This document shows, piece after piece, positions 4,782 through 63,256 of a stretch of DNA of 64,000 nucleotides. The DNA is from Malacoraja senta (taxonomy: Eukaryota), in the NCBI GenBank assembly GCA_038087875.1, contig CM075982.1, forward strand, positions 60,512,001 to 60,576,000. Reading direction: 5' to 3'. The first letter of the stretch is position 1, and each line of letters begins with the position of its first letter. Both the position numbers and the translations under genes were made by a program. A model generated the notes under the pieces. It ran no database searches. It worked only from the letters and a program-made list of their open reading frames with translations, and had not been told where the DNA came from.

Positions 4782-5002
4782 TTTAAGAAGGAACTGCAGA
4801 TGCTGGAAAAATCGAAGGTAGACAAAAATACTAGAGAAACTAAGCGGGTGAGGCAGCATCTATGGAGCGAAGGAAATAGGTGACGTTTCGGGTCGAGACC
4901 CTTCTTCAGACTGAAAAAGGGTCTCGACCCGAAACATCACCTATTCCTTCGCTCCACAGATGCTGCCTCACCCGCTGAGTTTCTCCAGCATTTTTGTCTA
5001 CC
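4782..5002. mobile_element. Palindromic Penelope-derived element with back-to-back hammerhead-like cores
   Basis: ~95-bp inverted arms centred at ~4910; near-perfect TSD tttaatat(t)aaaag at 4768-4781 and 5003-5015. Confidence 0.85.
4882..4909 (-). ncRNA. Minimal (short stem III) type I hammerhead ribozyme motif
   Basis: Minus strand reads CUGAAGA-A-GGGUCUCGACCC-GAAA-CG-UC; core intact, stem I weak. Confidence 0.65.
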
Positions 5003-5478
5003 TTTAATATAAAAGGCATAATGTGATTTCCTTGGTACCATTCTCCATGAGTCTTTCCTACCCTCGCGGTCCTACCCACTGCAAACCCAAAACAACAACA
5101 TGGCTGGTAGAAGGACAATGGCTTTCAACAGAACATACAGTAGTTGGGTTAGAAGATGCCCTCAAGCTATTCTGGCTGAGAGGTGTAGCATCGGTCTTGT
5201 GTAGCAACAACCTAGGTTAATTGGCTGACAGTCAATGGCAAACATATTAGTTGAATGTAAGGTGTTGCAAGACAAATGGTCTCCTTGAGCCTTTGCAATA
5301 AACTTCCACACCACGGAGTTACTTTCACGACCACCTCTGCCTTAAAAAAAACTTCCAGCAAGCCAGCACTGATGGCATATGGGGCATGTATATCATCATC
5401 TTTGATGTATTCAATGTCACCGCTAGCCACCACCTCAGAAGTTGGAGTGTCAGTGTAAGTCAACAGTCCCGATAATCT

Positions 5479-5573
5479 AAGGTAGACACAAAATGCTGGA
5501 ATAACTCAGCGGGACGGGCAGCATCTCTGGAGAGTAGGAATGGGTGACGTTTCGGGTCGAGACCCTTCTTCAG
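5479..5573 (-). mobile_element. Penelope-derived short element with intact hammerhead-like core (5546-5573)
   Basis: 15-bp TSD cagtcc(c/a)gataatct at 5464-5478 and 5571-5585; element stops exactly at the CUG of the core. Confidence 0.85.
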
Positions 5574-6073
5574 TCCAGATAATCTGATGGAAGAGGGTTG
5601 GTGGGTTGTGTGAAACCGCACTGGTTCATCCGAGCACTTTAATCTGTGAAGCTGGAAATCTGGGTTTTCTTTGCAGGAGTCTTAACTTGTACTCCATCAT
5701 CAAGGCACTGGGTGGTTTCTGCTTGCATTTGAAACAGAAGCTGTGATGTTGGCCATCAGGTTCTGGATGACATCTGAGCTCCCAAATATGCAGACAATGT
5801 TGGCCACTACTGGAAAGGATGAGCTATAATCTCTGCATGAGATTGTTACATAGTGGTTAAATTGCTGGACAATCTGCCAGTTCTGAGCCATTCGTTCAGA
5901 TAAAAAAGTTCAAAATCCACCATGAATGTTGGAGAATTTAAATAGTTGCAATTAAATAAATCTGAACTTTAAGAAAATTATCATGCAATCACTTGTACAT
6001 CACTCCAGTTGACTCATAACTGACTCCTTCATTCATTCGGGACAAATAGAGATGGAAAAACAAACTAAAAAAC

Positions 6074-6198
6074 TCTGAAGGATCTCGACCCGAAACGTCA
6101 CCTATTCCTTTTCTCCAGAGATGTTGCCTGACCAGCTGAGTTACTCCAGCATTTTGTGTCTATCCGGTCTAAACCAGCACCTGCAGTTCCTTCCTGCA
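6074..6198 (+). mobile_element. Penelope-derived short element (core partly deleted)
   Basis: ctgaaggatctcgacccgaaacgtcacctattcc...ccagcacctgcagttccttcc; flanked by aaaaactctg repeats. Confidence 0.8.
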
Positions 6199-6352
6199 AA
6201 AATAGAAAAACTCTGTCAGCTTAGTGTCAAATTCCTGGATGCTCCTTGACAATGTCTGTAGGCTTCTCACAAGCCATTCAACATTTCATCTATAAACTTC
6301 TGTAGCAATGTTCCTCTGCAACCTCCTTGCCACCTAGCAAGGTGGTATGTAT

Positions 6353-6605
6353 GAAACATAGAAACATGGAAAATAGGTGCAGGAGGAGGCCATTCAGCTC
6401 TTCGAGCCAGCACCGCCATTCATTGTAATCATGACTGTTCATCCACAATCAGTAACCCTTGCCTGCCTATTCCCCATACCCCTTGATTCAGCTAGCCCCA
6501 AGAGCTCTATCTAACTATTTTAAATTCATCCCGTGAATTGGCCTCCACTGCCTTCCGTGGCAGAGAATTCCACAAGTTCCCAACTCTCTGGGTATAAAGC
6601 TTTCC
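6353..6605 (-). mobile_element. CR1 LINE 3' fragment
   Basis: gaaacatagaaacatggaaaataggtgcaggaggaggccattc tail; similar to 41817-42143 and 53821-54100. Confidence 0.9.
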
Positions 6606-7319
6606 TCTTATATTAGAAGCAGGCCACGTGTCTGGAGAGTCAAGACATAAGGTTCTACCCTTTGTCTGAACTTTCAACAGGCACTTTGGTGAAAGTGAAA
6701 ATTGGTCATTGTGATAATGAAATCAAGTAAAGGTGTCTTCCTTTGCCTTTATCGTTTTGCTTTGCAGTCCAAGGTGTCTGAATTTTTTTTGAAGAGTCAA
6801 AGGGAAGTACATGGTGCAGAGAAGGTGGGAAGTAGGTCCTATGAGCTTCCACCATCTGCAGCTAGTAAATCAGAAGGGAGGGTGTAAGGAGGGAAAGGTG
6901 GGATATGATTATGATTTAATAGGATGTTCAATTCATCTAGTGGTCAAGTCATACCAATTGGTATCCCAGTGATTGCCAACGCTTTCTCCCCCACAATATA
7001 TGGAAATACAATTGTATATTTCCTCTTCTGGTAAGTTGCTGCTGCACTCTATCTTCATCCTTGCAACATCTTTCCTTGTAAGAGAGAGGGACTGGTGCAA
7101 ACAATTACTGTGCATTCTTGAGCTCCGTGGATAAAGTTGATTTCCCATTCACCGGGGCAGCTGTGTGTCGTGCTATTCCTTACAGTTTACAGGTCAGCTT
7201 CATGTGTAGAACACTTCCAGCTCCTGGTCCAGACTTTCTCTGCAATGAATGGCATTGGCTGGACATTACCATCATTGTCAGCATAAAATTGATGTGTTGA
7301 TTGTGTTCCTCAGAAAGGG

Positions 7320-7530
7320 GTAACGGAGCAATGCTGCAACAAAAAGTAGCATGGAGGTTTCCTCAATCGCTCAGGGTGAACAGTTATCCCTCAATCAACA
7401 TCACCAAAACAGGTCATTGGTTAATTGGCCTTTGTGGGGCTTGGTTCTACATAACGAATACTATACGTACTCCCAGCCCTACAATGACTACACTTCAAAC
7501 GCACATCAAACGAGGGCTGCGAAAGAAGTT
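7320..7530 (+). mobile_element. Deu-domain SINE, decayed
   Basis: ttatccctcaatcaacatcaccaaaacag...ctttgtggggcttg...tgactacacttcaaa matches the recalled Deu core. Confidence 0.6.
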
Positions 7531-8439
7531 AGAATGTTTTTCTTTCATTAAACTGCTCTTTCATGAATAGAATTGTTATAGCCTTCAGTATATTTGTGTG
7601 TCAGATTAAAATATTTGATCAATGGTAAACTGGTTCAGGCAAGATTCGAGGTATGTTTATATGATATCAAATTTGGGTGTGTAGCTGAAGTGAAAAATCG
7701 GTTGTTTCGACTGACAGGTTGTTTTAAGCATTGTGCTGATTATTAAAGTTGTAAACAGGCAAGGTTAGGCAGGTTTGGAGAAGTTGCCAATGACTGATTT
7801 GACAGATTTGGTTTCTGGGTGTGTTGATATAATTGACAGGTCATGTTAGGCATGTATTAGGATGATATGTAATGAATAGGTTGTGTATGAGTGGAATATA
7901 TATATAACAATACATAATTGAAGTATGTACTCAAACTGCAACCTTTTCTCAATGTGTGGGCACAGCAGTGTACCAGCAATCTAGATGTCTGGGGTAAAAA
8001 CCCAGGCCTTATGTGTTCATATCCCACCCCAACAAGTTGTGGACAAGTCATGTGCGTAACCCACTGCCCACATATGGAACATTCTCTCTACTGTTCCATC
8101 ATCTAGGCTTCGGATAACATTCGCAATACAATGTGCTGTTGAAAAATCGGTCGTTCACGCAAGCCTAGACAGGTCACAGAATTTATATGGCAGTAGGATA
8201 CTTGCGTATGCAAGTAACATAAATGACATGAACAAAAAGTGCCCAAACTCTCACAAATTTAATTATAAGTGTTAAAATAAATTGTAGTGAAATAAATTAA
8301 GAAAATTACTACTGTATTGGCTTTGCATTGGGAATGAAAGACTGCCAATGCTGCATATAGTTTAGATTATCAAGAGTTTCAAGATAGCGACATGAGATAG
8401 ATACATGAGACATGAAAATGACGCCAAATCTGGCGACTC

Positions 8440-8590
8440 AGTGTCTCAGTGTACACTTGTACTGTATCTGAGATACTTATCTAAGATGTATCTAAGTGGT
8501 TATATATAGTAATACTTGTACTGAACTGTATAATGAATGAATTTCACTGTACCTCGGTACATGTGTCAATTAAAGTACCATGCCATACCA
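8440..8590 (+). mobile_element. Rex1/Babar-like 3' tail
   Basis: gaatttcactgtacctcggtacatgtgtcaattaaa followed by taccatgccatacc. Confidence 0.55.
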
Positions 8591-8593
8591 GCT

Positions 8594-8690
8594 AGATGCA
8601 GGGTCTCAACCCAACATGTCAACCATCCTTCTGTCTTCACAGATGCTGTCTCCACAGTTCCTCCAGCAATTTGTTTTTTGGGTTCAAGAT
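8594..8690 (+). mobile_element. Decayed Penelope-derived short element
   Basis: gatgcagggtctcaacccaacatgtc...cacagatgctg...gttcctccagca. Confidence 0.6.
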
Positions 8691-9134
8691 AGATTTGGGG
8701 GTTTACATAAAGTTGGCTGGCAGATGATGAGGATAAAGGTGAAGTTGCATGTTTTATTTGTTGGTGGAATATAGCAGATAATAATCTACATAGAGACCCC
8801 ACGTTAGGAAAGGGAGATTGATTATGACTATTTGGAACCATGATGGAAATAGAATGACTGACATGCTGTGTGATGTTAGGTCTAGTATATGACTAATTAT
8901 GATGTGTGACAGAAAATTGATGGCGTTGCTAAGATGTTGATTGATAGAATCAAATTTAGGTGGGTTTTGGATGAAGTAAGTACTGCAAAAAGTAGAATGA
9001 CTGATAAAATAGAAAATTTCTAAATACAGTTGACAGATAACAGATAGACAAAGAATGAGATGTGTAATGTTATGCTGGTAGGCAGGCAGAACTGATCATG
9101 GGGTGGATATCATTATTGAAGAAACATGGGGGTA

Positions 9135-16878: not shown

Positions 16879-16881
<3 letters not shown>

Positions 16882-22397: not shown

Positions 22398-22596
22398 GAA
22401 GACAAAAGAGACTGCAGATGCTCGAACCTGGAATGAAAAAACAACACTGGAACAACTTAGCAGGTTAAGCAGCACCCTGCAGACACAAGTTGTACGTTGA
22501 TGATGAAGGGTCTCGACCAGAAACTTTGATTTCCACCTTTTACCTCCACAGTTGCAGTTTGACCCACTGAGCTCTTCCAGAGTTCCGTTATTTGTA
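22398..22596. mobile_element. Older palindromic Penelope-derived element
   Basis: Inverted arms around tgatgaagggtctcgaccagaaac; TSD cattgac(t/a)gt(c/a)ctgt at 22383-22397 and 22597-22611. Confidence 0.75.
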
Positions 22597-25512: not shown

Positions 25513-25602
25513 TTATTCTGAAGTAGGGTCCCAACCCGAAACATCCCCTCTCCATTTTCTCTGGAGATGTTGCCTGACCCGCTGAGTTTCTCCAGAATTC
25601 TG
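25513..25602 (+). mobile_element. Penelope-derived short element
   Basis: ctgaagtagggtcccaacccgaaacatc; 21-bp flanking repeat at 25492-25512 and 25603-25623 (2 mismatches). Confidence 0.8.
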
Positions 25603-26309
25603 TGTCCATCTTCAATTATTCACCATTGATTTGCCTTAGACACCCGTAGTTGTTTTTTAAAATATAAGTTTTGAGTTATTGGGTGAAGATTTGAATGCAG
25701 TTTTGGGTTCATTTACTTATCTTAGGCTAATTTCTATTTCTCATTAGTGCACTGTCTCTAAGTGAAAATCATTTAGTTTCATATCTACTTCGATAATGCC
25801 CAACTCCACCTTTCCAAAATGTATTTGCATCGTTCCACTGCCTCCACCTTGTCAGGCTATGTGTCCTGAAATTCACTAATATAGCATAAGTATTGGGAAT
25901 ATTGAGTCATTTGTCTTTATTTCCTATCCCAATCCCTGTACAGTGGCTACCAACACCAACCCTCCCCTGGTAACCTGATGTCGCGTTTAGATCTGGGACG
26001 AATTGCCAGCCATATAACTACATCACCACTAAGTTTGTTTTTACCAGCTCGGAAATATTGCTCGAGCCTACACCGTCTCTTCATATATAGTTCATCAGAT
26101 GTTTGTCCACATTGATGTGAACTATAGCTGCAAATTTAAATCTAGGGTGTTGGGAGTTCATTTTATTTGTGACCATAAATGTGTTCCCAAAATATACTGT
26201 CGACTTGAATAAGCAATTTTGAAGGTCCAGTTTACAAACTACCGATTTGTGAGTTATTTCACAGAAATATATATTGAAACTAATAGCACCAGAGACTATT
26301 TACCTCATT

Positions 26310-26620: not shown

Positions 26621-29519
26621 AAAATGCACTTGAACATGCATTTAGATTTGAAACCGGTTTGAGGGGTTGAGGCTATGTTACTTCACAGCAGTAAGTGTTG
26701 AATATGACATTTTCTTACTAATTTTTGTACTTTGTTCAGAACAATATACTTACCATGTAGCCCACAAAACATGGCCCAAATATATATATTATTCATATTT
26801 CCGTGTTATATGGAGAATGATCACAAACATGCTTGATCATCTTCTGATCTAATGCCTGTACAAGTACACTTCTAACATGAATAAATGGTGCCCAGATCTT
26901 GCACCAATAGTTGCATCTCCACCATTTTGCCCAATTAATATTTAGTTAGCTCAGCATTGAATAATGATTAGACGAGCAAAGAAAGCAAAATATGTGTTTT
27001 GGTATTTTCTTTCACATCTCAGGATGTTTCCAATCGTTTTGGTCCCAGTGAAGCACATTAATAACTGTTGTCGTAATGTGGACATTGTTCTGTGAATGCT
27101 GTGAAGTTATATGACTGGCTAAGTTGATGCAGGATTTGGTGCAAATATGTATGTTAAAGAAACTACACGTTGGTAAAGTTGCCTAGCTTCCTTTAGGTAA
27201 AACTGCATTTAGCCTGCAGGTTTGTGCTAGATTAGATTAGATCCTTCTCTAGGCTCAGGGCAGACTGTGGCGCCACTTGTCCTCTGGAATACTCAAATCA
27301 ACTAAGAGTGAAATAGGTGTGTTTGTTGCCATTCTCACTATTTAAAGGGACATTCTGATAACAGTGAAGATTGGGCTGCAGCTTCAGAACTGATTCGGGC
27401 TGCTCAGACACCTACCAATTCCACAGAGTGCAATACAACAGAAAGAGAATGTTTTATCCAACATTTGAGTGTTGAGATATTCTTTCCATGGCTGCATAAG
27501 TAGCAATGTCATTCTGAACATGCTATCAGTTGAGGCCTCATTATAGCCAGAGCTGGATTCAGATACCTCAGGGGAAGAGATAAGGACATGTCCATCTGTG
27601 AAGAAACCACTGCCAGAGAGTTTTCAGAGATGCCACATCCTACTTGGATTTGTTTGATCAACAAAGTGTTTACCGTTATAAGTTTACCAAAGCTGAAAAA
27701 GCTTCCTCCACCTGATTCTGATAGTCTAATGGGGCATGGGGCATGGGGGGGGGGGGGACCTTCCTGACATTTACCACACCCATGAGAAGATCAAATTCTC
27801 TCACCAAATTTAGGGATCCCTCTTTCTCCTACAGCTTATCTCTCTGTGGCAGTTTGATTGTGTGTCATTATTGCCTGTCTGCAATATGGACTGTGCCTTT
27901 AAGAACAGCGAATGTCTCTTTTAAGAAAGATGCCCTTTGATTGAGATGTAGAAAATTATTGTAAGCTGTGTACAACTGCATGTAGGTCTCAGTTTAATGC
28001 ATAATTCTGGGTGTAAACTACTCTAAAGCTGTTTCATTATGTGTTTGGCCAAGTTTCGGATTTTGTTGCGAGCATCCTAACCTGACATTAGTGTTCCATG
28101 CAGTGACATTTAGTGCACCAGAGGTAGATGAATGTAAATTTCCCTGCATCGATATTTTCATTTATAAGTAGTAGTAGGCAATGTGTTTCGCATGTGTCCT
28201 ATTTTTTCCATTTGTTTTTTCATAAAATGGCAAGATATATACAGATGAGGGTTGTTGTTTGGACTACCGTAGTTCAGATATGCAAAGAAAACCCAGCTGG
28301 TCTTCCAAAATCTTTACTCCCATCTTCTGACCCCAAGAACCATTTAAACTGTCTTTTGAATGTAAGGATCCTCTCCGCATTCACAGCGTCCGTTTATTTA
28401 TTGTGATTAGTTTGTTGTGTTCTATTAATGGATTGCCAATTTGCCTCTTGGTTGGTGTGGGAAAGTTGGGCCGAAGGGCCTGTTTCCACACTGTATTACT
28501 CTAACACTCCAATTTTGAATAGGGGTTAGCACATACAACATTTCTGTATATTTCAGTACAAAAAAAGTCTTTTTTTAATCATCTTCCACAGCAAAATAAT
28601 TATATGCTTTCCATTATTCCCTTCTTACTCTCATAGTTTTTCCATGTCCTGAATATTTTCATTAAGCCTGTGACCTAAGCTGAGTACAAGATTTGGCACA
28701 ATTTGACCAGTGAATTACACAGTTTAATCTTGACATCTTCTGTCTTTACAGAAGTAATAATGTTCAATGTTCTACTTTCAGTGTTCAGTTGCTGATTCGC
28801 AGTAATCTAACGGATGTGTTAAATGACAAGTCTGCGGTGATTCCAAGACTCTTCCCAAATATACCAATTAACTGTTGACCTTAGTTGCACTATAGCAACT
28901 TTTCTGAGTAACATTTATTATTTCCATTTGTCTGCATCAAACCTCTTGTCACTGTTGCATTAATTTTCAGCTTTCATCCATCTTCAGGAGATTCTGACTA
29001 GCCTCTTCTCCACTAACATCTATTGCCTGAAAATCACCTCTCATTCGATATTGACTGGGGAAAGAATTTCAAAGGCAAAGAACTGCACACTGACACAGAC
29101 AAATAGTGTAGGAAGGAACTGCAGATGCTAGTTTAAACGAGAGAGAGACACAAAACGTCAGAAAAGTGACGTCATTATCCTTGGCTTCCATCTTTATTGC
29201 CTTGGGCTGCTCAGAGTCTTAAAACTTTATTGACTTGGAGATGAGCTTCTAAACAATGTAGTTTCATCCCAAACCCCAACTCCTTCCTTTTTGGTTATAT
29301 CACCACATAAACCACTAATTCATTCATTATTTGGTTGTAAGAGGAACGTACCAGGTGTCTTCTTTTGTGTTCATCTTCCATGTTTCAAATGTTGACATCG
29401 CTGTCATCGTCCATCCTGAAAAGGATGCAAGCTTCTGCGACAATCAATGGGAGCCATCACTTGTTGCAATAGATGATGGTGGTAGCAGAATTAGCTCAGG
29501 ATACTTCCAGTTTCCAGCC

Positions 29520-30815: not shown

Positions 30816-30832
30816 TGTTGCCATATCGTTGA

Positions 30833-30933
30833 AAGTAGACACAAAATGCTGGAGTAACTCAGTGGGACAGGCAGCATCTCTGGAGAGGAGGAATGGGTGA
30901 CGTTTCGGATCGAGACCCTTCTTCAGACTGATG
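30833..30933 (-). mobile_element. Penelope-derived short element with intact hammerhead-like core (30899-30926)
   Basis: Perfect 10-bp TSD atatcgttga at 30823-30832 and 30934-30943; core CUGAAGA-A-GGGU-CUCG-AUCC-GAAA-CG-UC. Confidence 0.88.
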
Positions 30934-31019: not shown

Positions 31020-31125
31020 TTCCTCCGACGAGGCGTCTTCAACCTTAAAATGCTAACTCTTTTTCTCTTTCCACAGATGCTGCCGGACCTGTGAGTGCTT
31101 CCTGCATTTTCTGTTTTTATTTGCT
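31020..31125 (+). mobile_element. Old Penelope-derived repeat
   Basis: taactctttttctctttccacagatgctgccggacctgtgagtgcttcctgcattttctgttttt. Confidence 0.6.
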
Positions 31126-34324: not shown

Positions 34325-34650
34325 ATCCTAAACCAATATCGCTAAATAGATTAACTTGTCATTATCATGCTTCTGTTTGGGGGATCTCATTATCTGCAAA
34401 TTATAAGTCGTTTTTTCCTACATTACAATAATATATCCACTTCAGAGGTAGACAAAAATGCTGGAGAAACTCAGCGGGTGAGGCAGCATCTGAGGAAGGG
34501 TCTCGATTCAAAAGGTCACCTATTCCTTCGCTCCATAGATGCTGCCTCACCCGCTGAATTTCTCCAGCATTTTTGTCTATCCACTTCAGAAGTACTTCGT
34601 AGGCTATGAAGCATTTTGGGACATTTTTGGTTAGCATTAAGGCTATTTTA
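34325..34650 (+). mobile_element. Deu-domain SINE interrupted by a Penelope-derived palindrome
   Basis: gtcattatcatgcttctgtttgggggatctc...ttcctacattacaa...cacttcaga[insert]agtacttc...aagcattttgggac. Confidence 0.65.
34447..34577. mobile_element. Palindromic Penelope-derived element
   Basis: Perfect 13-bp TSD tatccacttcaga at 34434-34446 and 34578-34590; inversion junction at the CUGA of the core. Confidence 0.88.
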
Positions 34651-35991: not shown

Positions 35992-38806
35992 ACAAGGCTC
36001 TAACAAATGTATACATGCCTACGTGAAACATTTCAGTATCAATGTTTAAGAGCCATAGATCGCTCTGGTGTTTGTAAAATATTTATTTACACATTGTTTT
36101 GCTGTTAAAAGTCTTATGAGATGTGACACTCACTGCAAGTTAACTTTTGTTCTTTATTTTCGAAAATCATTGACGAGTCCATCGCAGTCTAAAAACTCTG
36201 ATGTAGTTGTGTAAAGCTTGACAGTAAAATCTCATTGCTGCTGTGTTTCATAAAATGTTCTTGATGGTTGCATTTTAGAGTGAATACTGTCTTCACCAGT
36301 CATTCACTCTGGATGTCTATGATTCTGGCAAGTGATAAAAGAATGTACCTATTACATGGCAGACATTTTTTGCATTTTTAATTAAGAAAATTGTAACTCA
36401 TAGCATTGCAAGCATGTAATAAGGTTGAAATCGTGTCGGGTTAAATTAAATCCAGCTTTCCTCAATATAAGTGCATCGTGCATCAAATTTAATCCACAAA
36501 GATAACATGTTCATTCCTGATATGTGTTTCTTTTCTTTCAAGTTGTCTTCTCTGATGCATGTGAACTGTTTGAGTCAAGTGCAAGCATATTTCTATTTGT
36601 GAATGCAGGCAAAAGTGGCAGCTTGTAAATGCTGTTAAGTTAATTTGATGCGCATCAAAATAAAGTTGACTCCAGTTTGAAATTGACTTGTGTCGTGCGT
36701 ATAAATGTGGTACATGTCATTGCGTGTTTTTGTTTACCAGACTGCCATTTTGTTGGAGTACTCCAGGAGTAAAATCAAATTAGTCTCGTCTGAATCCAGG
36801 GTTTTGATTGTTCAGTGATTAGGGCACTCTATTTTAAAGGCCTTTCTTCAACCAATTTAAACAAAGAGTTGAAATATTAACAAACAAAACTTAAGCATGC
36901 ACAGACCAGGAAGGGAAACATTCCCAGAATTTAAATATTTCTCAAAAAAATCAAATGAATATAATCTTCAGAACAAACTCATTCTCATTAATTCTTTGTT
37001 TGTTTCAAGTTATTTTAACCAATTTTTTTAAAAGGGATTTATCTTGATTCCTTGAATGATAAGACTGTACATGGCAGTTTGTTGAAAAGAGCCTTGGGTT
37101 AGATTGAGTAATGAAGATATGTGGATAACTAAATGCTGTGGAGTTTCAATAGCCTAAGCGGATAGGGGAGCAAGTTGCACAGGAGTAGACAAATGGGGTA
37201 GACTGTGTAAATGTCCTCGAGTCAGGATTTAATGGTGAAAATGCATGGGAGTGGAAAAACATCACAGTGTCTTGATTGTTTTATTCTTTACTCAGTTAAA
37301 TGAATGGAAAACTCATCTAGTATTGACTATGTTATAACCAATCTTTGCAAGGAACAGGCTTCTTGGGTCAAAATATTTGTGCTCACTGACTTTTACAATG
37401 CTTTTCAAATTATGGATGGGAAAATAGTTTTACCAAGTTGTTATCAAAAAGGGCATGGTTTATAGTTAGACTATCTTAAGGGGTGCCCTTACACAGGTCA
37501 TATTGCTCCCAATAAGGACTCGGGTGGAATTTCTCTAGATTTTGTTTTTGTTGCATGACCCACTTTGAGGAGACCTTCTGCTCATAATTCTGCATTGGAA
37601 TTCATTCCTGATTCTACCTATTAAAGTCCAGCATTTACTAAGCCAGACTTTTCCAATCTTGTATACAAGTAGTGCAATCAATACTATTTAAATACGTTAT
37701 TACACGATTTCATATAGGGAATAGCTGAAGTTTCTTACATATCTTTAAAATGAGTGGTATGATTTTTGTAGTCACCATGCATCATCACCTTGTAAACCTT
37801 TTGAATATATGCATTATGGCTACACATACTAGAGCAATCCTATGTCAATTACACTATTTAAAAGGACATTATGTATTAAGTGAATCATCTTGTGAGATAT
37901 TTATCAAAACTGCACATAATATGATTGACATGATGATGCACAGTGTAATGTATGTGCTCTGCAGGGATATGGGGAAAGAACATAGGAATGGGATTAGACA
38001 GCTACAGCTGAAGAACTGGAATTGGCACAGGCACAAAGAGGCACCATCTGTGCTGCGTTTTCTGCGATGAATCTTAAGGCCTGGTTCTGCAACAAGATGG
38101 CCCTGATGTAGAGCGGAAGAAGCATAGGTACTTGGCCAAGATTGCCCGATGGTAAAGTCGTTTCGAGGTAGAAATGTAACAGCACAAGTGGGCTATTGTG
38201 CCTCTCAATCTATTCTATCATTTAGTGATATCACCGCAGTTCTATGAGCTAATTCCACAAGCTCACCTTGTCCTTATTTTCGTAAGAAAATTTACGAGGA
38301 GTATGTTAATGTCATTGGTTTTCAAAGATTTATGAATCTTGGATGTATAATTAACAGCTGATTTAACATCAATTATAAAATAAAAATGGAAAATCTGGAA
38401 CTACTCAGTAGGTCAGGCCATTATCTGTGGGGAGAGAAACAGAATTGAAGACCCTTCGTCTAAAAAAGATCTTCCATTATTTTTTGTTTTTCAATTTAGA
38501 TTTTCATTATCATCAATTATCATTTCAATTATCATCAATTATCCTAATCTTGCAACTGTTTGTATGTAGAGGTCTTTTATGTCTATGTTCCCTAAAGAAC
38601 GGGTTTTAATTGTTAGATCATGAACTTAGCCCTTGTTTTTCCAACCATTGGAAATATTTTGTTCTCTTTTATCCTCTGTTTTATATATATTTTGAAAGGT
38701 TTAATCAAATCAACCCATAACGTTCATAGTTGCAGAGAATACAATCCTCATTTTTGTAATCTTCTCTTGCTACTGAATCCTAGTTTTAGTCTCCCCCTTC
38801 CCACTT

Positions 38807-40484: not shown

Positions 40485-40950
40485 AACATGAAAAATGACC
40501 CTTCAGATCATTAAGTCCACATGACTATCAACTATCCATTTACAATAATCTTGCATTATTCCCATTTTTTTAATTCTCCCCAAAATATTGTTGACTCTCT
40601 CCACCCCCACCGCCCCCTAATTCTTGCATTGACTTATACACCTATTCACAGCAGCTAAATAACCTAACGACATGCATGACTTTGGGATGTGGGAAGAAAC
40701 TGGAGAATCCTGGGGAAACCCATACGGTCTGCACACAGAGAGCAACTGAAGTCAGTAGTTGTTTAAGAAAGAACTGCAGATGCTGGTAAATCGAAGGTAG
40801 ATACAAAGTGCTGGACCTATTCCTTCTCTCCATAGATGCTGCCTCACCCGCTGAGTTACTCCAGCATTTTGTGTCTACCTTTGAAGTCAGGAGTTAACGT
40901 GGTTCTCTGGTGCTTTTAGGAAGTGGCTCTACGAACCCTGCCTAGTGTGT
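40485..40950 (-). mobile_element. Older V-SINE interrupted by a Penelope-derived insert
   Basis: ctttgggatgtgggaagaaactggagaatcctggggaaaccca (reverse V-domain). Confidence 0.7.
40756..40881. mobile_element. Palindromic Penelope-derived element lacking the hammerhead core
   Basis: 9-bp TSD tgaagtcag at 40747-40755 and 40882-40890; forward arm starts at acctattcc (40815). Confidence 0.85.
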
Positions 40951-42965: not shown

Positions 42966-43312
42966 ATCAAAACCAAACTGCTGGAGGAACTCAGCAGGTC
43001 AGGCAGCATCTGTGGTGAGATATGGATAGTCGATGTTTCCTGTCAGGATTCTTCTTCAAATTGTTTAAGGAGGAACTGCAGATGTTGGTTAAACCAACAT
43101 AAAATGCTGGAGTAACTCAGCGGGTCAGGCAGCATCTCTGGAGAAAAGGAATAGGTTTACTCCAGCTTGCCTTCAGACGATGAAATCTGTCTAAACCCAA
43201 AATGTCGTCCGTCCAGTCCCCCCCACAGAGGGGGCATGTTGCCTGACCTACTGAGTTCCTACAGCAGTTTGTGTTTTTCTCAAAATTCTAGTATCTGTAT
43301 CTCTTCTGTCTC
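42966..43312. mobile_element. Older Penelope-derived palindrome with a younger relative (~43063-43170) nested at its centre
   Basis: Outer arms aaactgctggaggaactcagcaggtcaggc / gcctgacctactgagttcctacagcagttt; flanking repeat caa(t/c)taa(g/a)cagca at 42953-42965 and 43313-43325. Confidence 0.75.
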
Positions 43313-48607: not shown

Positions 48608-49082
48608 TTAGACTTCAGAGATACAGCGTGGAAACAGGCCCTTCGGCCCACCGAGTCCGCGCTGACCAGCGATCACCCCGTTCACTTGCACCATCTAACA
48701 TACTAGAGATTCTATAAATTTTCAATTTATAGAGTCCAATTAACGTACAAACCTGTACGTCTTTGCAGTGTGGGAGGAAACCGGAGCGCCCGGCGCAAAC
48801 ACACGATGCTACAGGGAGAACTTACATACTCTGTATATCTGTACATGCAGTCTGAAGAAGGGTCTCGACCCAAAACGTCACCTATTCCTTTGCTCCATAG
48901 ATGCTGCCTCTCCCGCTGATTTTCTCCAGCATTTTTATCTACCTTTGATTTTTCCGCATCTGCAGTTCCTTCTTAAAAATACTCTGTACAGACAGTGCCC
49001 ATTGTCAAGATTGAATCCAGGTCTCTGGCACTGAAAGGCAGCAACTCTACCGCTATGCCACCCAGTCTGCCACTGTGCCGCC
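48608..49082 (-). mobile_element. HE1-type V-SINE interrupted by a Penelope-derived insert
   Basis: gagatacagcgtggaaacaggcccttcggcccaccgagtcc...ggcagcaactctaccgct...ccactgtgccgcc. Confidence 0.9.
48849..48978 (+). mobile_element. Penelope-derived short element
   Basis: TSD atactctgta at 48826-48835 and 48979-48988; the core GAAA is mutated to AAAA. Confidence 0.88.
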
Positions 49083-50890: not shown

Positions 50891-51055
50891 CTGCTCCGTA
50901 ATAGAGCCCCAATTAACATGAAAACGGGCCCTTAACCCACCCAGTCCACACTCATCATTAAACACTCATTCATGCCAATCCTATTTTATTCTGTTCACAT
51001 TACCTAATGTTACCATGCACTAACATTCTAGTTTAAAGGAAGTATATATACTGAC

Positions 51056-51271
51056 AGTAGAGAAAAATGCTGGAGGAACTCAGCGGGTGAGGCAGCATCT
51101 ATGGAGAGAAGGAATAGGCAATGTTTCAGGTCGAGACCTCTGAAGAAGGGTCTCAACCCGAAACATCGGCAATTCCTTCTCTCCACAGATGCTGCCTCAT
51201 CCGCTGAGTTCCTCCAGCATTTTTCTCTACCTTCGATTTTTCCAGCATCTGCAGTTCTTTCTTAAACATTT
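51056..51271. mobile_element. Palindromic Penelope-derived element
   Basis: Perfect 13-bp TSD tatatatactgac at 51043-51055 and 51272-51284; core ctgaagaagggtctcaacccgaaacatc at 51140. Confidence 0.88.
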
Positions 51272-56210: not shown

Positions 56211-56305
56211 ATCAGTCTGAAGAAGGGTTTCGGCCCGAAACGTTGCCTATTTCCTTCACTCCACAGATGCTGCATCACCTGCTGAGTTTCTCCAGCATTT
56301 TTGTC
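56211..56305 (+). mobile_element. Penelope-derived short element
   Basis: atcagtctgaagaagggtttcggcccgaaacgttgcctatt...catttttgtc; possible TSD tacctaatc at 56178-56186 and 56306-56314. Confidence 0.85.
56217..56244 (+). ncRNA. Minimal hammerhead ribozyme motif in TSHZ2 sense orientation
   Basis: CUGAAGA-A-GGGU-UUCG-GCCC-GAAA-CG-UU; all core nucleotides present. Confidence 0.62.
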
Positions 56306-56827
56306 TACCTAATCATTCATTGGTCACCAAAAGAATGCAAATTATTGCAATGCTTTTCAAACACAGTTGCATCCCTGTTCATTCTTTCCAGTTGTCCTGG
56401 GCAAAACATGTGTAAAATGGCATGCTTTTTGGGGAGCACTTGAGCTTTTTTTCAACATACTGTGATCTATTCACCATTGACCTCCATTAAATTATTCCCC
56501 ACTCGGCCCACCTTTATATATTTATAATGGCATCATTATGTTGCTGTTATTTATGGTGGTCGAGGAAAGAGCACAGCAAGCATTGTCAATTTTTGATTTC
56601 GTTTTATAAAAATAAAGGAATTTTAATGCTGATAACCAATGATAAAAATGTGCTGAAAAATATCTATGTTTGGCTTAATGTTATTGGGAATAAACAATTA
56701 GATTTTGTTTCAATCCAATGTAGGATAAAGTTTGCAGTGCCTAGCCTGTGTAATGAGAGGGTTAAATGGAAAAGGAATAAGAAATAGGCCTTGAAATGTG
56801 GACCAGAAGAGTTTTATGAAGACGTGC

Positions 56828-59279: not shown

Positions 59280-59950
59280 TACATTGACAATTCTGTAAAT
59301 ACTCGGCAAGTCAAACAGCAATTGTGGAGCAAGAAGCAGAGTCAGTGATCTTTCATCAGCATTGGAGAGCATTGGCGATGAAATAGGTTCTCAGCAAGGA
59401 CAGTTGGGGAAAATTGGCTGGGAAGGAAAGAATGAAAGGATTTTATGATAGGATGAATTTCAGCTTTAGATTTAATGATAAAATAGGTGGTAGTGCAATA
59501 GAGGTGGATTATGGAACAAACAAAAATGATAGAAAAGATGTGTCAAGAGAAGGCGTAAGTGGGAATATCAGAATGATTATCTGAAATTATTCACCTGTTG
59601 TGTTGAATCAGAAGCAATAACCTGCCTGTTTGGAAGATAAGATTGCACACCTTGAGTTTACATTGAGCTTCGCTGGAACATATTAAGAGGCCGAAGATAA
59701 AGGCGCTATTGGTAGTGCAGTGGAGATTTTGACAGGAAATTGGAAATTGTACAATGATGACTTAATGTGCATTTGCATCCCACCTCACACAATATCTATC
59801 TTTCCCTCTTTGCCAACAGCCGACAGTTGAGACAGTATCATGAGCATCATGCATTCTGTGCTAAGTGGAACATAGTACTAGTACTAGTTCCATCCAGGTG
59901 CAGTATTTGGAAAAGGAAATGATAGAAGGACTGGTGTTCCCACCCCAATT
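59280..59950 (-). mobile_element. Decayed Penelope-like element: GIY-YIG endonuclease remnant plus pLTR
   Basis: Minus strand 59702-59601 translates FIFGLLICSSEAQCKLKVCNLIFQTGRL, resembling the PLE GIY-YIG C-terminus (GLL.C..EAQRKL.EQHLIF.LG.L); downstream ctgatgaaagatcactgac (59341-59359) is a hammerhead half-core. Confidence 0.72.
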
Positions 59951-60339: not shown

Positions 60340-60578
60340 ACAGCGGTGGAGTTTCTGCCTCACAGCGCCAGAGACCAGAATACGATCCTGACTACGGGTG
60401 CTTGTTTGTATGGAATTTGTATGATCTCCCCGTGTCCATGTGGGTTTTCCCCGGGTGCTCCGGTTTCCTCCCACACTCCAAAGATGTACAGGTTTGTAGG
60501 TTAATTGGCTTCAGTAAAAATTATAAATTGTCCCTGGTGTGTAGGATACTGCTGGTGTACGGGGATCGCTGATCGGCC
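60340..60578 (+). mobile_element. HE1-type V-SINE
   Basis: cagcggtggagtttctgcctcacagcgccagagacc head and V-domain. Confidence 0.9.
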
Positions 60579-61294
60579 ATTTTCTTGGTTTGGAATAGTG
60601 AATATTCTATCAAATGACACCCATATATATACATGATCTTTTTAAATAAAACCATATGTAGTTTTTGAGTAAACGTATTAACATTTTCAACAATTTTTGA
60701 ACTAAGAAAATACTTTTAATTTGAATTATGTCCTAGCCATTTGTAGAATATTAAAAGAATAAATATTTGCCATGTGGTTTTGCATTTTGTCGTAGGCTGT
60801 GTTGAAATAAAAGGTAATGCATTTATTGTGCCTAACATCCTAACCGTATTAATATTTTCAAACCTCCTGTATGATAAGGAGCCTAGAAATTGAACAGCAT
60901 AGCAATTGCTTTTTGGGCGCTAGCCATGCAAAACCTGACTTCAAGCAGAATAGTACACTTGGAACATTTTCTTAACCAAGAAAATGTTTTAATTATTAAC
61001 AGTTACTTTGCATCAATTATGTGATTGGTACTTATTAAAACTTCTTAAACATAAATGAAAGGAGTACTCTGTGATCTATCTCATATCTTTCAGTAAATCT
61101 CAGTATCTCTCAGTAAATAGCATCTGTAAGATCAATGACGTAGAGCTCGATGTTATGATCATCATAGGAGTGCACGTATGATCGCCCTCCTGGCACCTAT
61201 CTTATTTAAAATAACTTGTATGTCTCTGTGAATTAGAGTGGGAGCTGTCTCCATCACCCCAGTTGCCACTTTCTCCCCCTTGGTTCGGACAATC

Positions 61295-61985
61295 ACAATG
61301 AATGGCAGGGTCTTGGGGAACAAAGAGACCTTGGTGTAGTAGTCCCAAGATCCCTGAAGATGGCAGCAGGAGTAGATAGGATGGTGCAGAAGGCATATGA
61401 GATGCTTATCATCATTGGTTAAGGCATGGAGAATAAGAACAACATGCACCTTATAAAACATAGATTTAAGCCACAGTTGGAATATTGTTTGCACTGCTGG
61501 CCACTAAACTCTGGGAAGGACATACTTGCAGTGGAGAGGATGTTGACGAGGTTCGCCAAGATGTTACCTAGGGTGGAATGTTTCAATCATAAGGAGAGAC
61601 TAAAAAGACTGGGTTTGTTTTTCTTGAGGGAGAGTGGTAAAGGTGTAAATAAAAACATTATGAGTGTCATGGATTGAGCAGAGAGGGAGAAACCTGTCCA
61701 CATGGCAGAGTCATCTACATATAGAGAGAAGATAAGTTTAAGGATAGGAGTAAGAGGCTGAGGGGGGATCAAAGGAAGAGTTTTTATTTAATTCAAGGGT
61801 GGGTTGTCATCTGGAATGCACTGCCTGGGAAGTTGGTGGAGAAGGTTAATCTCACAACATTTAAGTAGCCTGTGAATGAGCACTTGAACTGCCAAGCAAT
61901 ACTAGTCTAAGCATCAATTGCTGGTAAATGGGATTAGTATAGATATATGCCTGATGAATGAATGAAAGGCCTGATTCTGTGTGGT
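61295..61985 (+). mobile_element. Old CR1 3' part
   Basis: ORF 61426-61677 (KPQLEYCLHCWP...KDILAVER...ERLKRLGLF). Confidence 0.85.
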
Positions 61986-62271
61986 GCTGCTGTCGGCCTG
62001 CCATGGGAGTATGCCTTTAACGCAGATATACTTTGCTGATACTTTGCAAAGCAAGTGTCAGTAGCTGTTAAATTAAGCCTCGCGCTGTGGAGATGCATAC
62101 ATTTTACCTCAGATTTTAATTGTGAGTGTAACTTAATATTGTTTCACTTTGAATCTGGGTCAATTTGGTTTTCATGGAGGACCAATAATGACATTGGTGC
62201 TAAATGAAATGATGCAAAAAGAATAACTGCAATCCTGTTTCTGGGTGAAGGTAAAGATTCTGAATACAACT

Positions 62272-62556
62272 GGGGCGGCACAGTTGCGCAGTGGTAGAAT
62301 AGCTGCCGTATGACGCCAGAGACCCCGGTTCGATCCTGACTACGGATGCCATCTGTATGGAGTTTTTACGTTCTGATGACCTGCGTGAGTTTTCTCCTGG
62401 GACTCTGGTTTCCTCCCAAACTCCAAAGACATACAGGTTTGTAGGTTAATTGGCTGGGTTTAATTGTAAACTGTCCCTAGTGTTTGGAGGATAGTGTTAC
62501 TGTGCGGGGATCACTGTTTGGAGTGGACTTGGTGGGCCGAATGGCCTGTTTCTGCG
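62272..62556 (+). mobile_element. HE1-type V-SINE
   Basis: ggggcggcacagttgcgcagtggtag head, ggttcgatcc B box, V-domain and tail. Confidence 0.92.
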
Positions 62557-63156
62557 ATTTTTCTTTTGTGGAGTATCCATGCTAGAATAATGCTTTTGAG
62601 AATGTGTTTCTTTCTTGCCCTCCTCCCCACTTTAATGTTATGTGTTTGGTACAAGTCTTTCTGTGTTGTGTGGTTAATGGTTATTTTAGAGTGGAGATAA
62701 TATCCAATGTTTACCGGTTGTATGCCTTATTTCTAAGTTAAAAGATGGTGTAACACTTTTCTGAGAAATTTGGTAATTTGTTATACAAATTTGTTAGAAT
62801 ATCAACAAAATAAAAGCCCACTGATACTTCTTAATCAGTACTTTGCACTTATCTGAGTTAAATTCAATCTGCCATTCCTTAGTTCACTTTCCCAGTTGAT
62901 CAAGATCCTCTGGTAATCTTAAACAAACTCCTTCACTACCCACTATGTTAGAAACAACAGGTACCACTGAGAAATGTGGTTTCTCGTTATTTCCAGTGCT
63001 GAGCTGTACAGCTGAGAGATCATCCGCCAGCCCTTAAAGGCACAAGTGCACAATGTCAACGTCACTCTTCTGGCTACTTGACAATGAGAGCACTAGTGAT
63101 TCCTGAGGATAGGAACTTGGTTTCCCACTTTACTAAGAGGGTCATAGGGTATTTCA

Positions 63157-63256
63157 AGTCTGAAGAAAGGTTCCAACCCAAAAAGTCATCGATCCTTTTC
63201 CTCCAGAGATGTTGCCTGGCCCACTGAGGTACTCCAGCACTTTGTATCCATCTTTA
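63157..63256 (+). mobile_element. Decayed Penelope-derived short element
   Basis: agtctgaagaaaggttccaacccaaaaagtc...ctccagagatgttgcctgg...tactccagcactttgt. Confidence 0.75.

What the first reader, a model, noticed from the sequence alone, without database searches (positions are those of the whole stretch)
4782..63256. Family of short retroposed elements built around a minimal hammerhead ribozyme
Seen: about 15 related 90-220 bp inserts (4782, 5479, 6074, 8594, 22398, 25513, 30833, 34447, 40756, 42966, 48849, 51056, 56211, 63157, and older ones at 597 and 31020). They share CUGA(A/U)GA-A-[stem II]-GAAA-CG-U(C/U); cores are intact at 4882(-), 5546(-), 30899(-) and 56217(+). Stem II stays paired across variants (GGGU/ACCC, GGGU/AUCC, GGGU/GCCC, AGGUU/AAUCU). 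Known: Penelope-like elements carry short-stem-III type I hammerheads whose palindromic stem III (here ACGU) allows cleavage as dimers, and an extra A between A9 and stem II occurs in natural hammerheads (CChMVd +). Inference: this is an abundant, recently mobile, non-coding ribozyme-bearing family. Caveats: stem I is weak (AUCAGU/ACCUAU, 2 bp + 2x2 loop + 2 bp) and some stem II variation is just CpG decay. The class is known; this family may not be characterised.
Basis: partly seen in the sequence, partly recalled or inferred. Interest (0 to 1): 0.8.

Follow-up and report, generated by a model that had tools for sequence, protein, structure and literature searches.

The report
Penelope retroelement ends with minimal hammerhead
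The short repeats are real and very abundant, but they are the ordinary retroposed tail ends of a Penelope-like retrotransposon, which are already known to carry this kind of minimal hammerhead ribozyme motif.

Summary
The four cores called intact are intact.

The repeat is the last 95-135 nt of a Penelope-like element (PLE). Longer copies run upstream through a 100-250 nt UTR into a GIY-YIG endonuclease ORF. In a little-skate copy that same ORF also holds a reverse transcriptase.

The insertions carry the published PLE signatures:
- two 3' ends about 32 nt apart (the "tail");
- head-to-head fold-backs inside a single 10-18 bp target-site duplication;
- 5' truncation.

The motif has the published features of the PLE minimal hammerhead: an extra A after A9, G10.1-C11.1, palindromic ACGU and a GUC site.

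- Stem II shows no real covariation. Changes are one-sided and strand-symmetric.
- The elements are not retrozyme-like. Tandem junctions are rare and unit ends are not at the cut site.
- Most copies are not recent (median 84% identity to the family majority).

Two things stand out. The family is huge: about 3% of sampled DNA and 33,610 exact intact motifs genome-wide. About 90% of copies with a complete motif start within a few bases of TCAGTCT, just upstream of it.

The scan has flagged this family in at least 16 other first-reader notes on this genome. Verdict: a new member of a known kind.

The parts
4782..4914 (-). Left arm of a fold-back insertion. Full unit with the long ('tail') 3' end. 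Intact hammerhead motif at 4882-4909(-).
   Evidence: nhmmer profile positions 4-137, E 1.9e-34. Core read. A single TSD, TTTAATAT(T)AAA, flanks 4782-5003.
4906..5003 (+). Right arm of the same fold-back, with the short 3' end. The core is mutated (G8A; CG to CA in stem III).
   Evidence: The two arms are 92% identical.
5475..5576 (-). Single short-form unit with an intact hammerhead motif at 5546-5573(-).
   Evidence: profile 6-107, E 2.4e-32. 15-bp TSD AGATTATC(T/G)GGACTG.
6075..6199 (+). Single long-form unit, truncated at its 5' end inside the CUGANGA box, so the ribozyme is incomplete.
   Evidence: profile 12-138, E 3e-42. 10-bp TSD AAAAACTCTG.
8590..8676 (+). Diverged single unit with a mutated core.
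   Evidence: profile 6-96, E 1.8e-10.
22407..22586 (.). Diverged fold-back: arm 22407-22483(-) and arm 22500-22586(+).
25514..25616 (+). Single short-form unit with an A9U core mutation.
   Evidence: profile 5-107, E 4.4e-23. 15-bp TSD.
29106..29158 (-). 3'-terminal fragment (profile 86-138, long end only).
   Evidence: E 2.6e-09.
30830..30931 (-). Single short-form unit. Intact core at 30899-30926(-) with a G.U wobble in stem II.
   Evidence: profile 4-105, E 5.3e-32. 12-bp TSD.
31025..31116 (+). Old, diverged unit.
   Evidence: E 1.6e-07. 12-bp TSD.
34442..34582 (.). Fold-back. The left arm (-) is truncated at profile position 52. The right arm (+) covers 6-102. Both ends are the short form.
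   Evidence: One 17-bp TSD flanks the pair.
40761..40885 (.). Fold-back. The left arm (-) covers 81-138. The right arm (+) starts exactly at the predicted cleavage product (ACC..., position 37).
   Evidence: One 14-bp TSD flanks the pair.
42973..43300 (.). Composite of three arms: 43156-43063(-), covering positions 37-138, is directly followed by 43062-42973(-), covering 6-94; the third is an inverted arm at 43188-43300(+).
48847..48978 (+). Single long-form unit with a G12A (CpG decay) core mutation.
   Evidence: profile 4-138, E 2.8e-33. 12-bp TSD.
51046..51267 (.). Fold-back with one short arm (-; 16-111) and one long arm (+; 8-138).
   Evidence: One 13-bp TSD, TATATATACTGAC.
56212..56310 (+). 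Single short-form unit of the second subfamily. Intact core at 56217-56244(+): stem II GGGU/GCCC, GUU cleavage site.
   Evidence: profile 4-102, E 2.2e-24.
63156..63257 (+). Diverged single unit with a mutated core.
   Evidence: E 5.9e-23.
618..676 (-).
   Evidence: E 4.5e-04.
38390..38458 (-).
   Evidence: E 4.3e-05.
59289..59354 (-).
   Evidence: E 2.2e-03. Marginal.

Best explanation
These repeats are retroposed copies of the terminal (pseudo-LTR) module of a Penelope-like retrotransposon (PLE). The PLE has a C-terminal GIY-YIG endonuclease, and its linker motif (C-x4-C-x2-C-H) is of the Neptune/Nematis type.

The module reads 5' to 3':
- TCAGT;
- a PLE-type minimal type I hammerhead motif, CUGAAGA-A-GGGU(CUCG)ACCC-GAAA-CGUC, with the predicted cut before ACC;
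- about 65 nt to a first 3' end, or about 97 nt to a second one.

Shown here:
- the link to the PLE ORF;
- the two discrete 3' ends;
- 5' truncation;
- a large excess of head-to-head pairs enclosed by one target-site duplication;
- a sharp 5' boundary 3-5 nt upstream of the motif.

Inferred mechanism, which follows the published PLE model:
1. The PLE protein cuts both target strands with a 10-18 bp stagger.
2. It starts reverse transcription at either of two internal sites in the RNA. This gives the short and long ('tail') ends.
3. It often primes on both strands. The two convergent cDNAs then meet at the RNA 5' end and are joined by microhomology, giving a fold-back.
4. Most templates were short RNAs beginning at the initiator-like TCA(+1)GTCT. 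These could be PLE transcripts copied from the RT entry site nearest their 5' end, or transcripts of earlier short copies.

The hammerhead motif is carried along as part of the module. By analogy with tested PLE hammerheads it could cut only as a dimer or with protein help. The inserted copies show little sign that cutting shaped them.
For: Family and coordinates.

Link to the PLE:
- Copies continue upstream into an ORF ending ...YIGETKRRLGDRF...KLEEQHLIF...FSNF.
- That ORF hits Pfam GIY-YIG at 23.5 bits against a cut-off of 22.6.
- At least 150 near-identical EN copies and 103,686 first-look candidates are in the genome.
- In little-skate locus L051, one ORF holds RVT_1 (68 bits) followed by this EN. 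About 110 nt further on lies the unit, with an intact motif and the short 3' end.

Insertion signatures:
- 3' ends: 84 short and 51 long among 152 unbiased arms, about 32 nt apart.
- Arm arrangement among 183 arms: 35 head-to-head, 3 tail-to-tail and 5 tandem pairs.
- Genome-wide: 1,540 perfect symmetric junctions and 2,637 fold-back junctions with a truncated second arm, against 64 tandem junctions.
- TSDs of 10-18 bp flank single copies and whole fold-backs: 29 of 136 insertions against 2 of 131 shifted controls.
- The two arms of a fold-back are more alike than random arms (0.857 vs 0.779, p = 2.5e-4).
- 5' boundary: 90 of 152 arms begin at profile positions 4-12, and only 6 of those 90 continue upstream.

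Published match:
- 30-40 bp tail, inverted 5'-truncated partner and hammerhead near the 3' end (PMC8557442).
- Two internal RT start sites that define the tail, and cleavage and extension of both strands (PMC11167929).
- Minimal hammerhead with a nucleotide between 9 and 10.1, G10.1-C11.1 and palindromic 15.2-16.2; mostly single truncated copies, some on opposite strands (PMC4209133).
Against: - The RT link rests on a related species, and the position of the ORF start relative to the motif is unknown.
- The transcription-start reading of the 5' boundary rests only on the pile-up and on my recollection of the initiator consensus. A strong RT stop or end-processing would give the same pile-up.
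- Self-cleavage is untested.
- Rfam hammerhead models do not match, neither at gathering threshold nor at E <= 10.
- The canonical dimer fold scores -12.7 kcal/mol against -29.7 for the predicted optimum.
- Stem I is only 2 bp, then a 2x2 loop, then 1-2 bp.
Confidence: 0.85

Rival explanations
1. Retrozyme-like element: tandem units are transcribed, cut by the hammerhead into monomers, circularised and retroposed, so that unit boundaries lie at the cleavage site.
For: Animal retrozymes carry type I hammerheads and are thought to be non-autonomous PLE derivatives (PMC7229834; bioRxiv 10.64898/2026.07.22.740005). One window composite (43156-42973, minus strand) reads positions 37-138 followed directly by 6-94. 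That is what a tandem template cut at the ribozyme site would give. 5' ends are weakly enriched at the cut site: 9 of 62 truncated arms at positions 33-37 against 3.3 expected.
Against: Tandem junctions are rare: 64 exact genome-wide, against 1,540 plus 2,637 fold-back junctions. TRF finds no arrays of the unit in the window. Unit ends lie at profile positions 4-12 and at about 101 or 135, not at 36|37. The symmetric cut-site junction has 0 matches.
Confidence: 0.05
2. The copies are nothing more than randomly 5'-truncated PLE insertions. No distinct short RNA or short-element lineage exists.
For: 41% of arms are truncated inside the unit at scattered positions. The subfamilies of the short units mirror those of the EN-bearing copies. 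The published view is that single motifs are 'probably related to truncated PLEs' (PMC4209133).
Against: Copy number falls from 90 arms reaching position 12 or less to about 6 that continue past position 4. Gradual loss of processivity does not produce a step like that.
Confidence: 0.08
3. The hammerhead-like motif is kept for a reason other than RNA cleavage. It could be a core-promoter or RT-binding element. Alternatively its palindromes could pair two template RNAs or two cDNAs.
For: The cut site does not define the ends of inserted copies. For an Anolis PLE, catalytic mutants did not affect insertion in vitro and no RNA-seq reads ended at the cut site (PMC11167929). The canonical fold is not favoured thermodynamically. 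Fold-back junctions cluster at the near-palindromic 5' end and at stem II. The motif starts 3 nt after an initiator-like TCAGTCT.
Against: Every catalytic-core position and the published accessory features are kept in the family majority. That is hard to explain without ribozyme function in the source copies. Related PLE hammerheads do cleave as dimers or with protein (PMC4209133, PMC11167929).
Confidence: 0.2
4. A tRNA-derived SINE read on the opposite strand, or a fold-back DNA transposon (MITE).
For: By eye, the antisense strand has box-A-like (TAACTCAGCGGG) and box-B-like (GGGTCGAGACC) strings. Many copies are palindromic and have TSDs.
Against: Rfam finds no tRNA or SINE family in the window at gathering threshold. 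The upstream EN ORF and the constant 3' ends fix the orientation. Single arms share the outer ends of the fold-backs, while the centre of each fold-back varies. TSD length varies from 10 to 18 bp, unlike a DNA transposon.
Confidence: 0.02

Closest known systems
Minimal hammerhead motifs in the pseudo-LTRs of metazoan Penelope-like elements (Cervera & de la Pena 2014, PMC4209133; Lunse, Weinberg & Breaker 2017, known to me only through PMC6765202)
   Same: Type I topology. CUGANGA...GAAA core. One unpaired nucleotide between A9 and G10.1. G10.1-C11.1 pair. No closed helix III, but a palindromic 15.2-16.2 (ACGU) that allows a dimer. A short, weak helix I. Thousands of dispersed, mostly single copies, some close together on opposite strands, and only a few inside full PLEs.
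   Different: Helix II is 4 bp with a tetraloop, not the 6-8 bp described for schistosome and Drosophila PLE motifs. The copy number is higher: 33,610 exact intact motifs, against the roughly 4,000-9,000 reported for coelacanth and Xenopus with another descriptor. No cleavage assay exists for this sequence.
Canonical EN+ PLE insertion architecture (Neptune, Penelope/Poseidon; Craig et al. 2021, PMC8557442) and the Anolis Poseidon in vitro mechanism (Frangieh et al. 2024, PMC11167929)
   Same: C-terminal GIY-YIG EN. Hammerhead near the 3' end. Heavy 5' truncation. An inverted 5'-truncated partner. An optional 30-40 bp tail, usually at one end only (7 of 14 fold-backs in the random sample pair one long with one short end, the commonest combination). 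The two 3' ends fit two internal RT start sites. The fold-backs fit cleavage and extension of both strands.
   Different: Here the dominant product is a 95-135 nt unit with a discrete 5' end just upstream of the motif. The papers I read do not describe such a pile-up. The TSDs are clear and are not confined to microsatellites.
Non-LTR retrozymes of animals (Cervera & de la Pena 2020, PMC7229834; Li, Clavereau & Pollet 2026 preprint)
   Same: Non-coding, carrying a type I hammerhead, related to the PLE pseudo-LTR, and presumably mobilised by the PLE RT.
   Different: Retrozymes are tandem arrays whose monomers are bounded by the cut site and form circular RNAs. These units are dispersed or head-to-head, are rarely tandem, and are not bounded by the cut site.
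Schistosome Sm-alpha / Sj-alpha SINE-like elements with hammerheads
   Same: Short, very abundant, non-autonomous retroposons that carry a type I hammerhead.
   Different: Those have a Pol III promoter and a canonical hammerhead with tertiary contacts. This unit has no tRNA-like head, and it is the terminal module of the autonomous PLE itself.

Membership tests
Penelope-like elements (EN+) | GIY-YIG endonuclease at the C-terminus of the element's ORF | tested here: met
   Pfam PF01541, 23.5 and 23.7 bits against a cut-off of 22.6, for ORFs directly upstream of the unit in L012 and L033. The ORF ends 100-250 nt before the motif in six loci.
Penelope-like elements (EN+) | Reverse transcriptase in the same ORF, upstream of the EN | tested here: met
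   Met only in a related genome. Little-skate locus L051 has one open frame with RVT_1 (68.2 bits), the homologous EN tail and then the unit. In this genome, open frames of up to 541 aa end in the EN, but their DNA could not be fetched. No RT phylogeny was made.
Penelope-like elements (EN+) | Optional 30-40 bp 'tail' at an insertion end; inverted 5'-truncated partner copy; heavy 5' truncation | tested here: met
   Two 3' ends about 32 nt apart, 84 short and 51 long. 35 head-to-head pairs among 183 arms. One TSD per fold-back. 41% of arms are truncated inside the unit.
Penelope-like elements (EN+) | Direct pseudo-LTRs flanking the ORF (partial tandem) | not tested
   No full-length copy was available in the DNA I could read.
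PLE-type minimal hammerhead (Cervera & de la Pena 2014) | Catalytic core C3 U4 G5 A6 N7 G8 A9 ... G12 A13 A14, A15.1-U16.1, H17 | tested here: met
   Present in the family majority and in 27 of 86 fully covered copies. 33,610 exact genome matches. Four intact copies in the window.
PLE-type minimal hammerhead (Cervera & de la Pena 2014) | Unpaired nucleotide between 9 and 10.1; G10.1-C11.1; palindromic 15.2-16.2 in place of a closed helix III | tested here: met
   The extra A is present in 85 of 86 copies. The 17-28 pair is G-C in 64 of 86. 15.2-16.2 is CG in 44 of 86, and most of the rest are TG or CA from CpG decay.
PLE-type minimal hammerhead (Cervera & de la Pena 2014) | Helix I of about 4-5 bp | tested here: inconclusive
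   Only U2.1-A1.1 and G2.2-C1.2 pair, followed by a 2x2 mismatch and 1-2 further pairs. A 2-bp helix I is described for the D. virilis PLE motif (PMC4209133).
PLE-type minimal hammerhead (Cervera & de la Pena 2014) | Compensatory covariation in helices | tested here: not met
   Within this family, stem II changes are one-sided: GT/AC counts of 4/4 and 7/9, and TG/CA of 5/4. The excess at pair 17-28 is CpG-driven. The two subfamilies differ by U-A to U.G only. This is expected for dead copies and does not argue against the fold.
PLE-type minimal hammerhead (Cervera & de la Pena 2014) | Self-cleavage after H17 (as a dimer or with protein) | not testable with these tools
   Only indirect data. 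5' ends are weakly enriched at the cut site: 9 observed against 3.3 expected. The RNA runs were available only as contigs, so read ends were not visible.
Rfam hammerhead families (RF00163, RF00008, RF02275-7) | Match to a covariance model | tested here: not met
   No hit at gathering score in the window, nor at E <= 10 in 4700-6300. This is expected because the motif lacks a closed helix III.
Non-LTR retrozymes | Tandem arrays of units, each with a hammerhead; monomer bounded by the cut site | tested here: not met
   64 tandem junctions against 1,540 plus 2,637 fold-back junctions. No arrays of the unit in the window. Ends are not at 36|37.
tRNA-derived SINE | tRNA-like Pol III head at the 5' end | tested here: not met
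   No tRNA or SINE family from Rfam in the window. The box-like strings lie on the antisense strand of an element whose orientation is fixed by the EN ORF.

The most novel reading that the evidence does not exclude
The 95-135 nt unit may be a self-contained mini-retroposon, the PLE counterpart of a SINE. It would consist of an initiator-type transcription start (TCA+1GTCT), the hammerhead motif and the RT entry module. Because PLE reverse transcription starts internally, any transcribed copy could be a template. On this reading, the near-palindromic 5' end and the hammerhead palindromes (stem II, ACGU) serve mainly to pair two templates or two cDNAs and so produce the fold-back insertions, rather than to cut RNA.
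Probability: 0.2. Interest if true: 0.55.

Novelty: new member of a known kind. Interest (0 to 1): 0.3.

Why it matters
The class is well described: minimal hammerheads in Penelope-like elements, together with their tails, fold-backs and truncated copies. The finding therefore does not open a new kind of system.

Its value is as a natural record. An estimated several hundred thousand insertions in one vertebrate genome show the same signatures that a single 2024 in vitro study reported for an Anolis PLE: two internal RT start sites and priming on both strands.

The record also adds a sharply defined 5' end next to the ribozyme, which could be tested as a transcription start. With about 33,600 intact motifs, this is one of the densest hammerhead loads I know of for a vertebrate genome. 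The nearest named relatives of its PLE are in the little skate. That makes the genome convenient material for asking whether PLE hammerheads cut in vivo at all.

Tried and rejected
- **Rfam:** the scan at gathering score and at E <= 10 over 4700-6300 found no hammerhead. The only hits were sub-threshold miRNA-precursor matches, caused by the long hairpin of the fold-back.
- **Covariation:** stem II pair counts over 86 copies show neutral, one-sided decay. Covariation cannot be established from this family.
- **Folding:** the canonical dimeric hammerhead is not the predicted optimum (-12.7 vs -29.7 kcal/mol).
- **Cleavage-derived ends:**
  - The symmetric cut-site junction has 0 genome matches.
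  - In the first 100 listed fold-back junctions with a truncated arm, only about 5 start at positions 35-37. Most start in stem II.
  - The sample enrichment is weak (binomial p about 0.02 for positions 35-38).
- **RNA evidence:**
  - No run is on record as RNA.
  - The four runs I laid (three other coded organisms) are contigs only, and two of them are flagged as probably DNA, so transcript ends could not be seen.
  - They do show 5,000-30,000 contigs per run matching only the repeat parts at 90% or more.
- **Full-length PLE of this genome:**
  - The EN-bearing copies in hand (L033, L036) are 5'-truncated.
  - I used a little-skate locus instead.
- **Species:** run and organism names are coded, so the species was not established. 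The closest named proteins are from Leucoraja erinacea at 79-83% identity.
- **Rejected readings:** a tRNA-SINE on the antisense strand, and a MITE or fold-back DNA transposon (see the rival explanations).

Full report
**1. Observation**

The window is G000:C6:60512001-60576000 of a 1.94 Gb vertebrate assembly. An nhmmer profile built from 36 natural copies finds 26 arms in about 20 insertions.

Reading the aligned cores confirms the four 'intact' motifs:
- 4882-4909(-)
- 5546-5573(-)
- 30899-30926(-)
- 56217-56244(+)

The remaining copies carry point mutations in G8, A9 or G12, or are truncated.

**2. Anatomy of the unit**

Positions below are profile positions: C3 of the hammerhead is position 9, and the predicted cut lies between 36 and 37. 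In the sense orientation the unit reads as follows:
- TCAGT;
- CTGAAGA, an extra A, GGGT-CTCG-ACCC, GAAA, CGTC, with the predicted cut before ACC;
- about 65 nt to a first 3' end (...GTGTCTACC, around position 101);
- or about 97 nt to a second 3' end (...GCAGTTCCTTC plus about 6 nt, around positions 133-138).

The 190-220 bp 'inserts' are two such units head to head.

**3. What it belongs to**

Some copies continue upstream through a C-rich 100-250 nt stretch into the end of an ORF (...IYIGETKRRLGDRF...KLEEQHLIF...FSNF).
- This ORF passes Pfam's GIY-YIG threshold.
- It carries a C-x4-C-x2-C-H linker of the kind described for Neptune/Nematis PLEs (PMC8557442).
- The genome holds at least 150 copies of this domain at 86-93% identity, and 103,686 first-look candidates.
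- The closest named proteins are two 'uncharacterized' little-skate (Leucoraja erinacea) proteins, one with an RVT_1 domain.
- In the corresponding skate locus, a single open frame has RVT_1 (68 bits) followed by this endonuclease. About 110 nt of UTR come next, then the same unit with an intact motif and the short 3' end.

The repeat is therefore the terminal module of a Penelope-like element.

**4. Insertion signatures**

The sample has 152 arms and excludes the copies used as bait. It comprises the window, 20 arbitrarily chosen 10-kb stretches, and the flanks of 29 loci.

3' ends:
- They fall into two classes, 84 short and 51 long, about 32 nt apart.

Arm arrangement:
- Among all 183 arms (the sample plus the bait copies), 35 adjacent pairs are head-to-head, 3 are tail-to-tail and 5 are tandem.
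- The outer ends of fold-backs are the constant 3' ends. The centre varies.
- In the 264-kb random sample (the window plus the 20 stretches), 7 of 14 fold-backs have one long and one short end, the commonest combination.

Genome-wide exact counts:
- The perfectly symmetric junction CCTTCTTCAG-W-CTGAAGAAGG occurs at 1,540 sites.
- Fold-backs with a truncated second arm give 2,637 matches.
- Tandem junctions number only 64.

Target-site duplications (TSDs) and arm similarity:
- Direct repeats of 10-18 bp flank single units and whole fold-backs: 29 of 136 insertions, against 2 of 131 shifted controls. Each fold-back is therefore one insertion event.
- Its two arms are more alike than random arms (0.857 vs 0.779, p = 2.5e-4).

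All of this is the published PLE architecture:
- heavy 5' truncation;
- an inverted 5'-truncated partner;
- a 30-40 bp tail, often at one end only;
- a hammerhead near the 3' end (PMC8557442).

It also fits the Anolis in vitro result. There, reverse transcription starts at two adjacent internal sites that define the tail, and both target strands are cut and extended (PMC11167929).

**5. The 5' boundary**

- 90 of the 152 arms begin at profile positions 4-12.
- Only 6 of those 90 continue upstream into the PLE UTR.
- The other 62 arms are truncated at scattered positions inside the unit.

A step like this needs a discrete RNA 5' end or a very strong stop. The boundary coincides with TCAGTCT. 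From memory, this fits the initiator consensus (YYANWYY; Drosophila TCAKTY). It is also conserved in long copies whose upstream UTRs otherwise differ.

PLE transcripts are reported to start inside the pseudo-LTR (PMC6765202, citing Arkhipova 2003 and Schostak 2008). My inference is that most short units were copied from RNAs starting here, with reverse transcription entering at the site nearest the 5' end. This step is inferred, not shown.

The RNA 5' end UCAGUCUGA is nearly palindromic. Two convergent cDNAs could therefore anneal at their 3' ends, which would explain the symmetric junction. Other junctions cluster in stem II with GAC or CT microhomology.

**6. The hammerhead**

The motif meets the core consensus and the three accessory features that Cervera and de la Pena list as not imposed by their search descriptor (PMC4209133):
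- a nucleotide between 9 and 10.1 (A in 85 of 86 copies);
- G10.1-C11.1;
- palindromic 15.2-16.2.

Weak points:
- Helix I is only 2 bp, a 2x2 loop and 1-2 bp.
- Rfam models do not match.
- The canonical dimer fold is not the predicted optimum.
- An alternative helix between GAAGAAGG and the downstream CCUUCU would sequester the core.

Stem II changes are one-sided and strand-symmetric apart from CpG sites.

Three CpGs lie in or next to the motif. One of them includes G12, which is why many copies are G12A.

Ends at the predicted cut site are at most weakly enriched:
- 9 observed against 3.3 expected in the sample;
- three copies start exactly at A1.1, two of them in the window (40815 and 43156);
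- about 5 of the first 100 listed junctions start there;
- the symmetric cut-site junction has no genome match.

This agrees with the Anolis finding that uncut RNA is the main template (PMC11167929).

**7. Abundance, age and range**

- In 264 kb of sampled DNA the unit alone makes up 3.0%, at 0.34 arms per kb. That extrapolates roughly to 6-7 x 10^5 arms.
- The intact motif pattern has 33,610 exact matches, against none for the reversed control.
- Non-CpG identity to the family majority runs from 74% to 94% (5th-95th percentile), with a median of 84%. The bulk is old, and 'recently mobile' holds at best for a minority.
- Contigs from four runs, from three other coded organisms, cover only the repeat parts of 4770-6210. 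Each run gives 5,000-30,000 matching contigs at 90% or more.
- The little-skate locus has five profile hits to the unit in 12.7 kb.

The family is therefore shared by related species.

**8. Comparison and verdict**

This is the known association of minimal, dimer-type hammerheads with Penelope-like elements, with the known insertion architecture. It is not a retrozyme (no arrays, and ends not at the cut site). It is not a tRNA SINE, and it is not a fold-back DNA transposon.

Three things go beyond the papers I read:
- the scale of the expansion;
- the dominance of a discrete 95-135 nt product;
- the position of its 5' end at an initiator-like sequence next to the motif.

I file it as a new member of a known kind, of modest interest.

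The scan's first readers flagged the same family in at least 16 other notes on this genome. I treated those as leads only.

**9. Limits**

- No full-length PLE from this genome.
- No RT phylogeny.
- No raw RNA reads.
- No cleavage data.
- The species is not identified.
- The end statistics rest on 152-183 arms plus exact-pattern counts.

Noticed in passing
window 53918-55201 (-) and 52852-53334 (+): A 427-aa open frame with a non-LTR reverse transcriptase domain (Pfam RVT_1, 95.7 bits). About 600 bp away, in inverted orientation, is a 160-aa ORF resembling the C-terminal part of the same LINE protein. This is a different retroelement from the PLE.
   Followed up: partly
window 15869-17341: A region whose only long ORFs are low-complexity (poly-Leu, poly-Gly/Pro, poly-Ser), with a perfect (TA)25 microsatellite at 16829-16879. 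Possibly a CpG island or first exon. Not examined.
   Followed up: no
window 4835-4983 (-): Sub-threshold Rfam hits to plant miRNA precursor families (MIR2118 at 45.8 bits against 85 needed; MIR1507). They are produced by the about 100-bp perfect-ish hairpin of the fold-back insertion. A transcribed fold-back would form a long dsRNA hairpin and could feed small-RNA pathways.
   Followed up: no
genome-wide junction list; e.g. unit profile positions 20-27: Fold-back junctions with a truncated second arm are not random. By eye, about 35 of the first 100 listed join ...CTTCAGAC to CCGAAAC (GAC microhomology, arm starting at positions 25-27). About 25 more start at positions 20-22. So the stem II palindrome is a hot spot for joining the two arms.
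   Followed up: partly
window 43063-43156 (-) followed by 42973-43062 (-): A head-to-tail pair. The upstream unit begins exactly at the predicted hammerhead cleavage product (ACC...) and runs to the long 3' end. It is then joined without a gap to a second unit starting at profile position 6. This is the one arrangement in the window that looks like a copy of a cleaved tandem transcript.
   Followed up: partly
unit profile positions 11-18 vs 44-51 (e.g. L014 arm at 1425, minus strand): The predicted lowest-energy fold of the monomer pairs the catalytic-core segment GAAGAAGG with the downstream CCUUCU(C). This would keep the hammerhead inactive, and is a possible switch.
   Followed up: no
L036 4933-5220 (+): An ORF with a YWTD-repeat-like sequence (...LYWTDWQTRSIHACNKRTG...) in one of the arbitrarily chosen stretches. 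It is probably an exon of an LDL-receptor-family gene and is unrelated to the finding.
   Followed up: no
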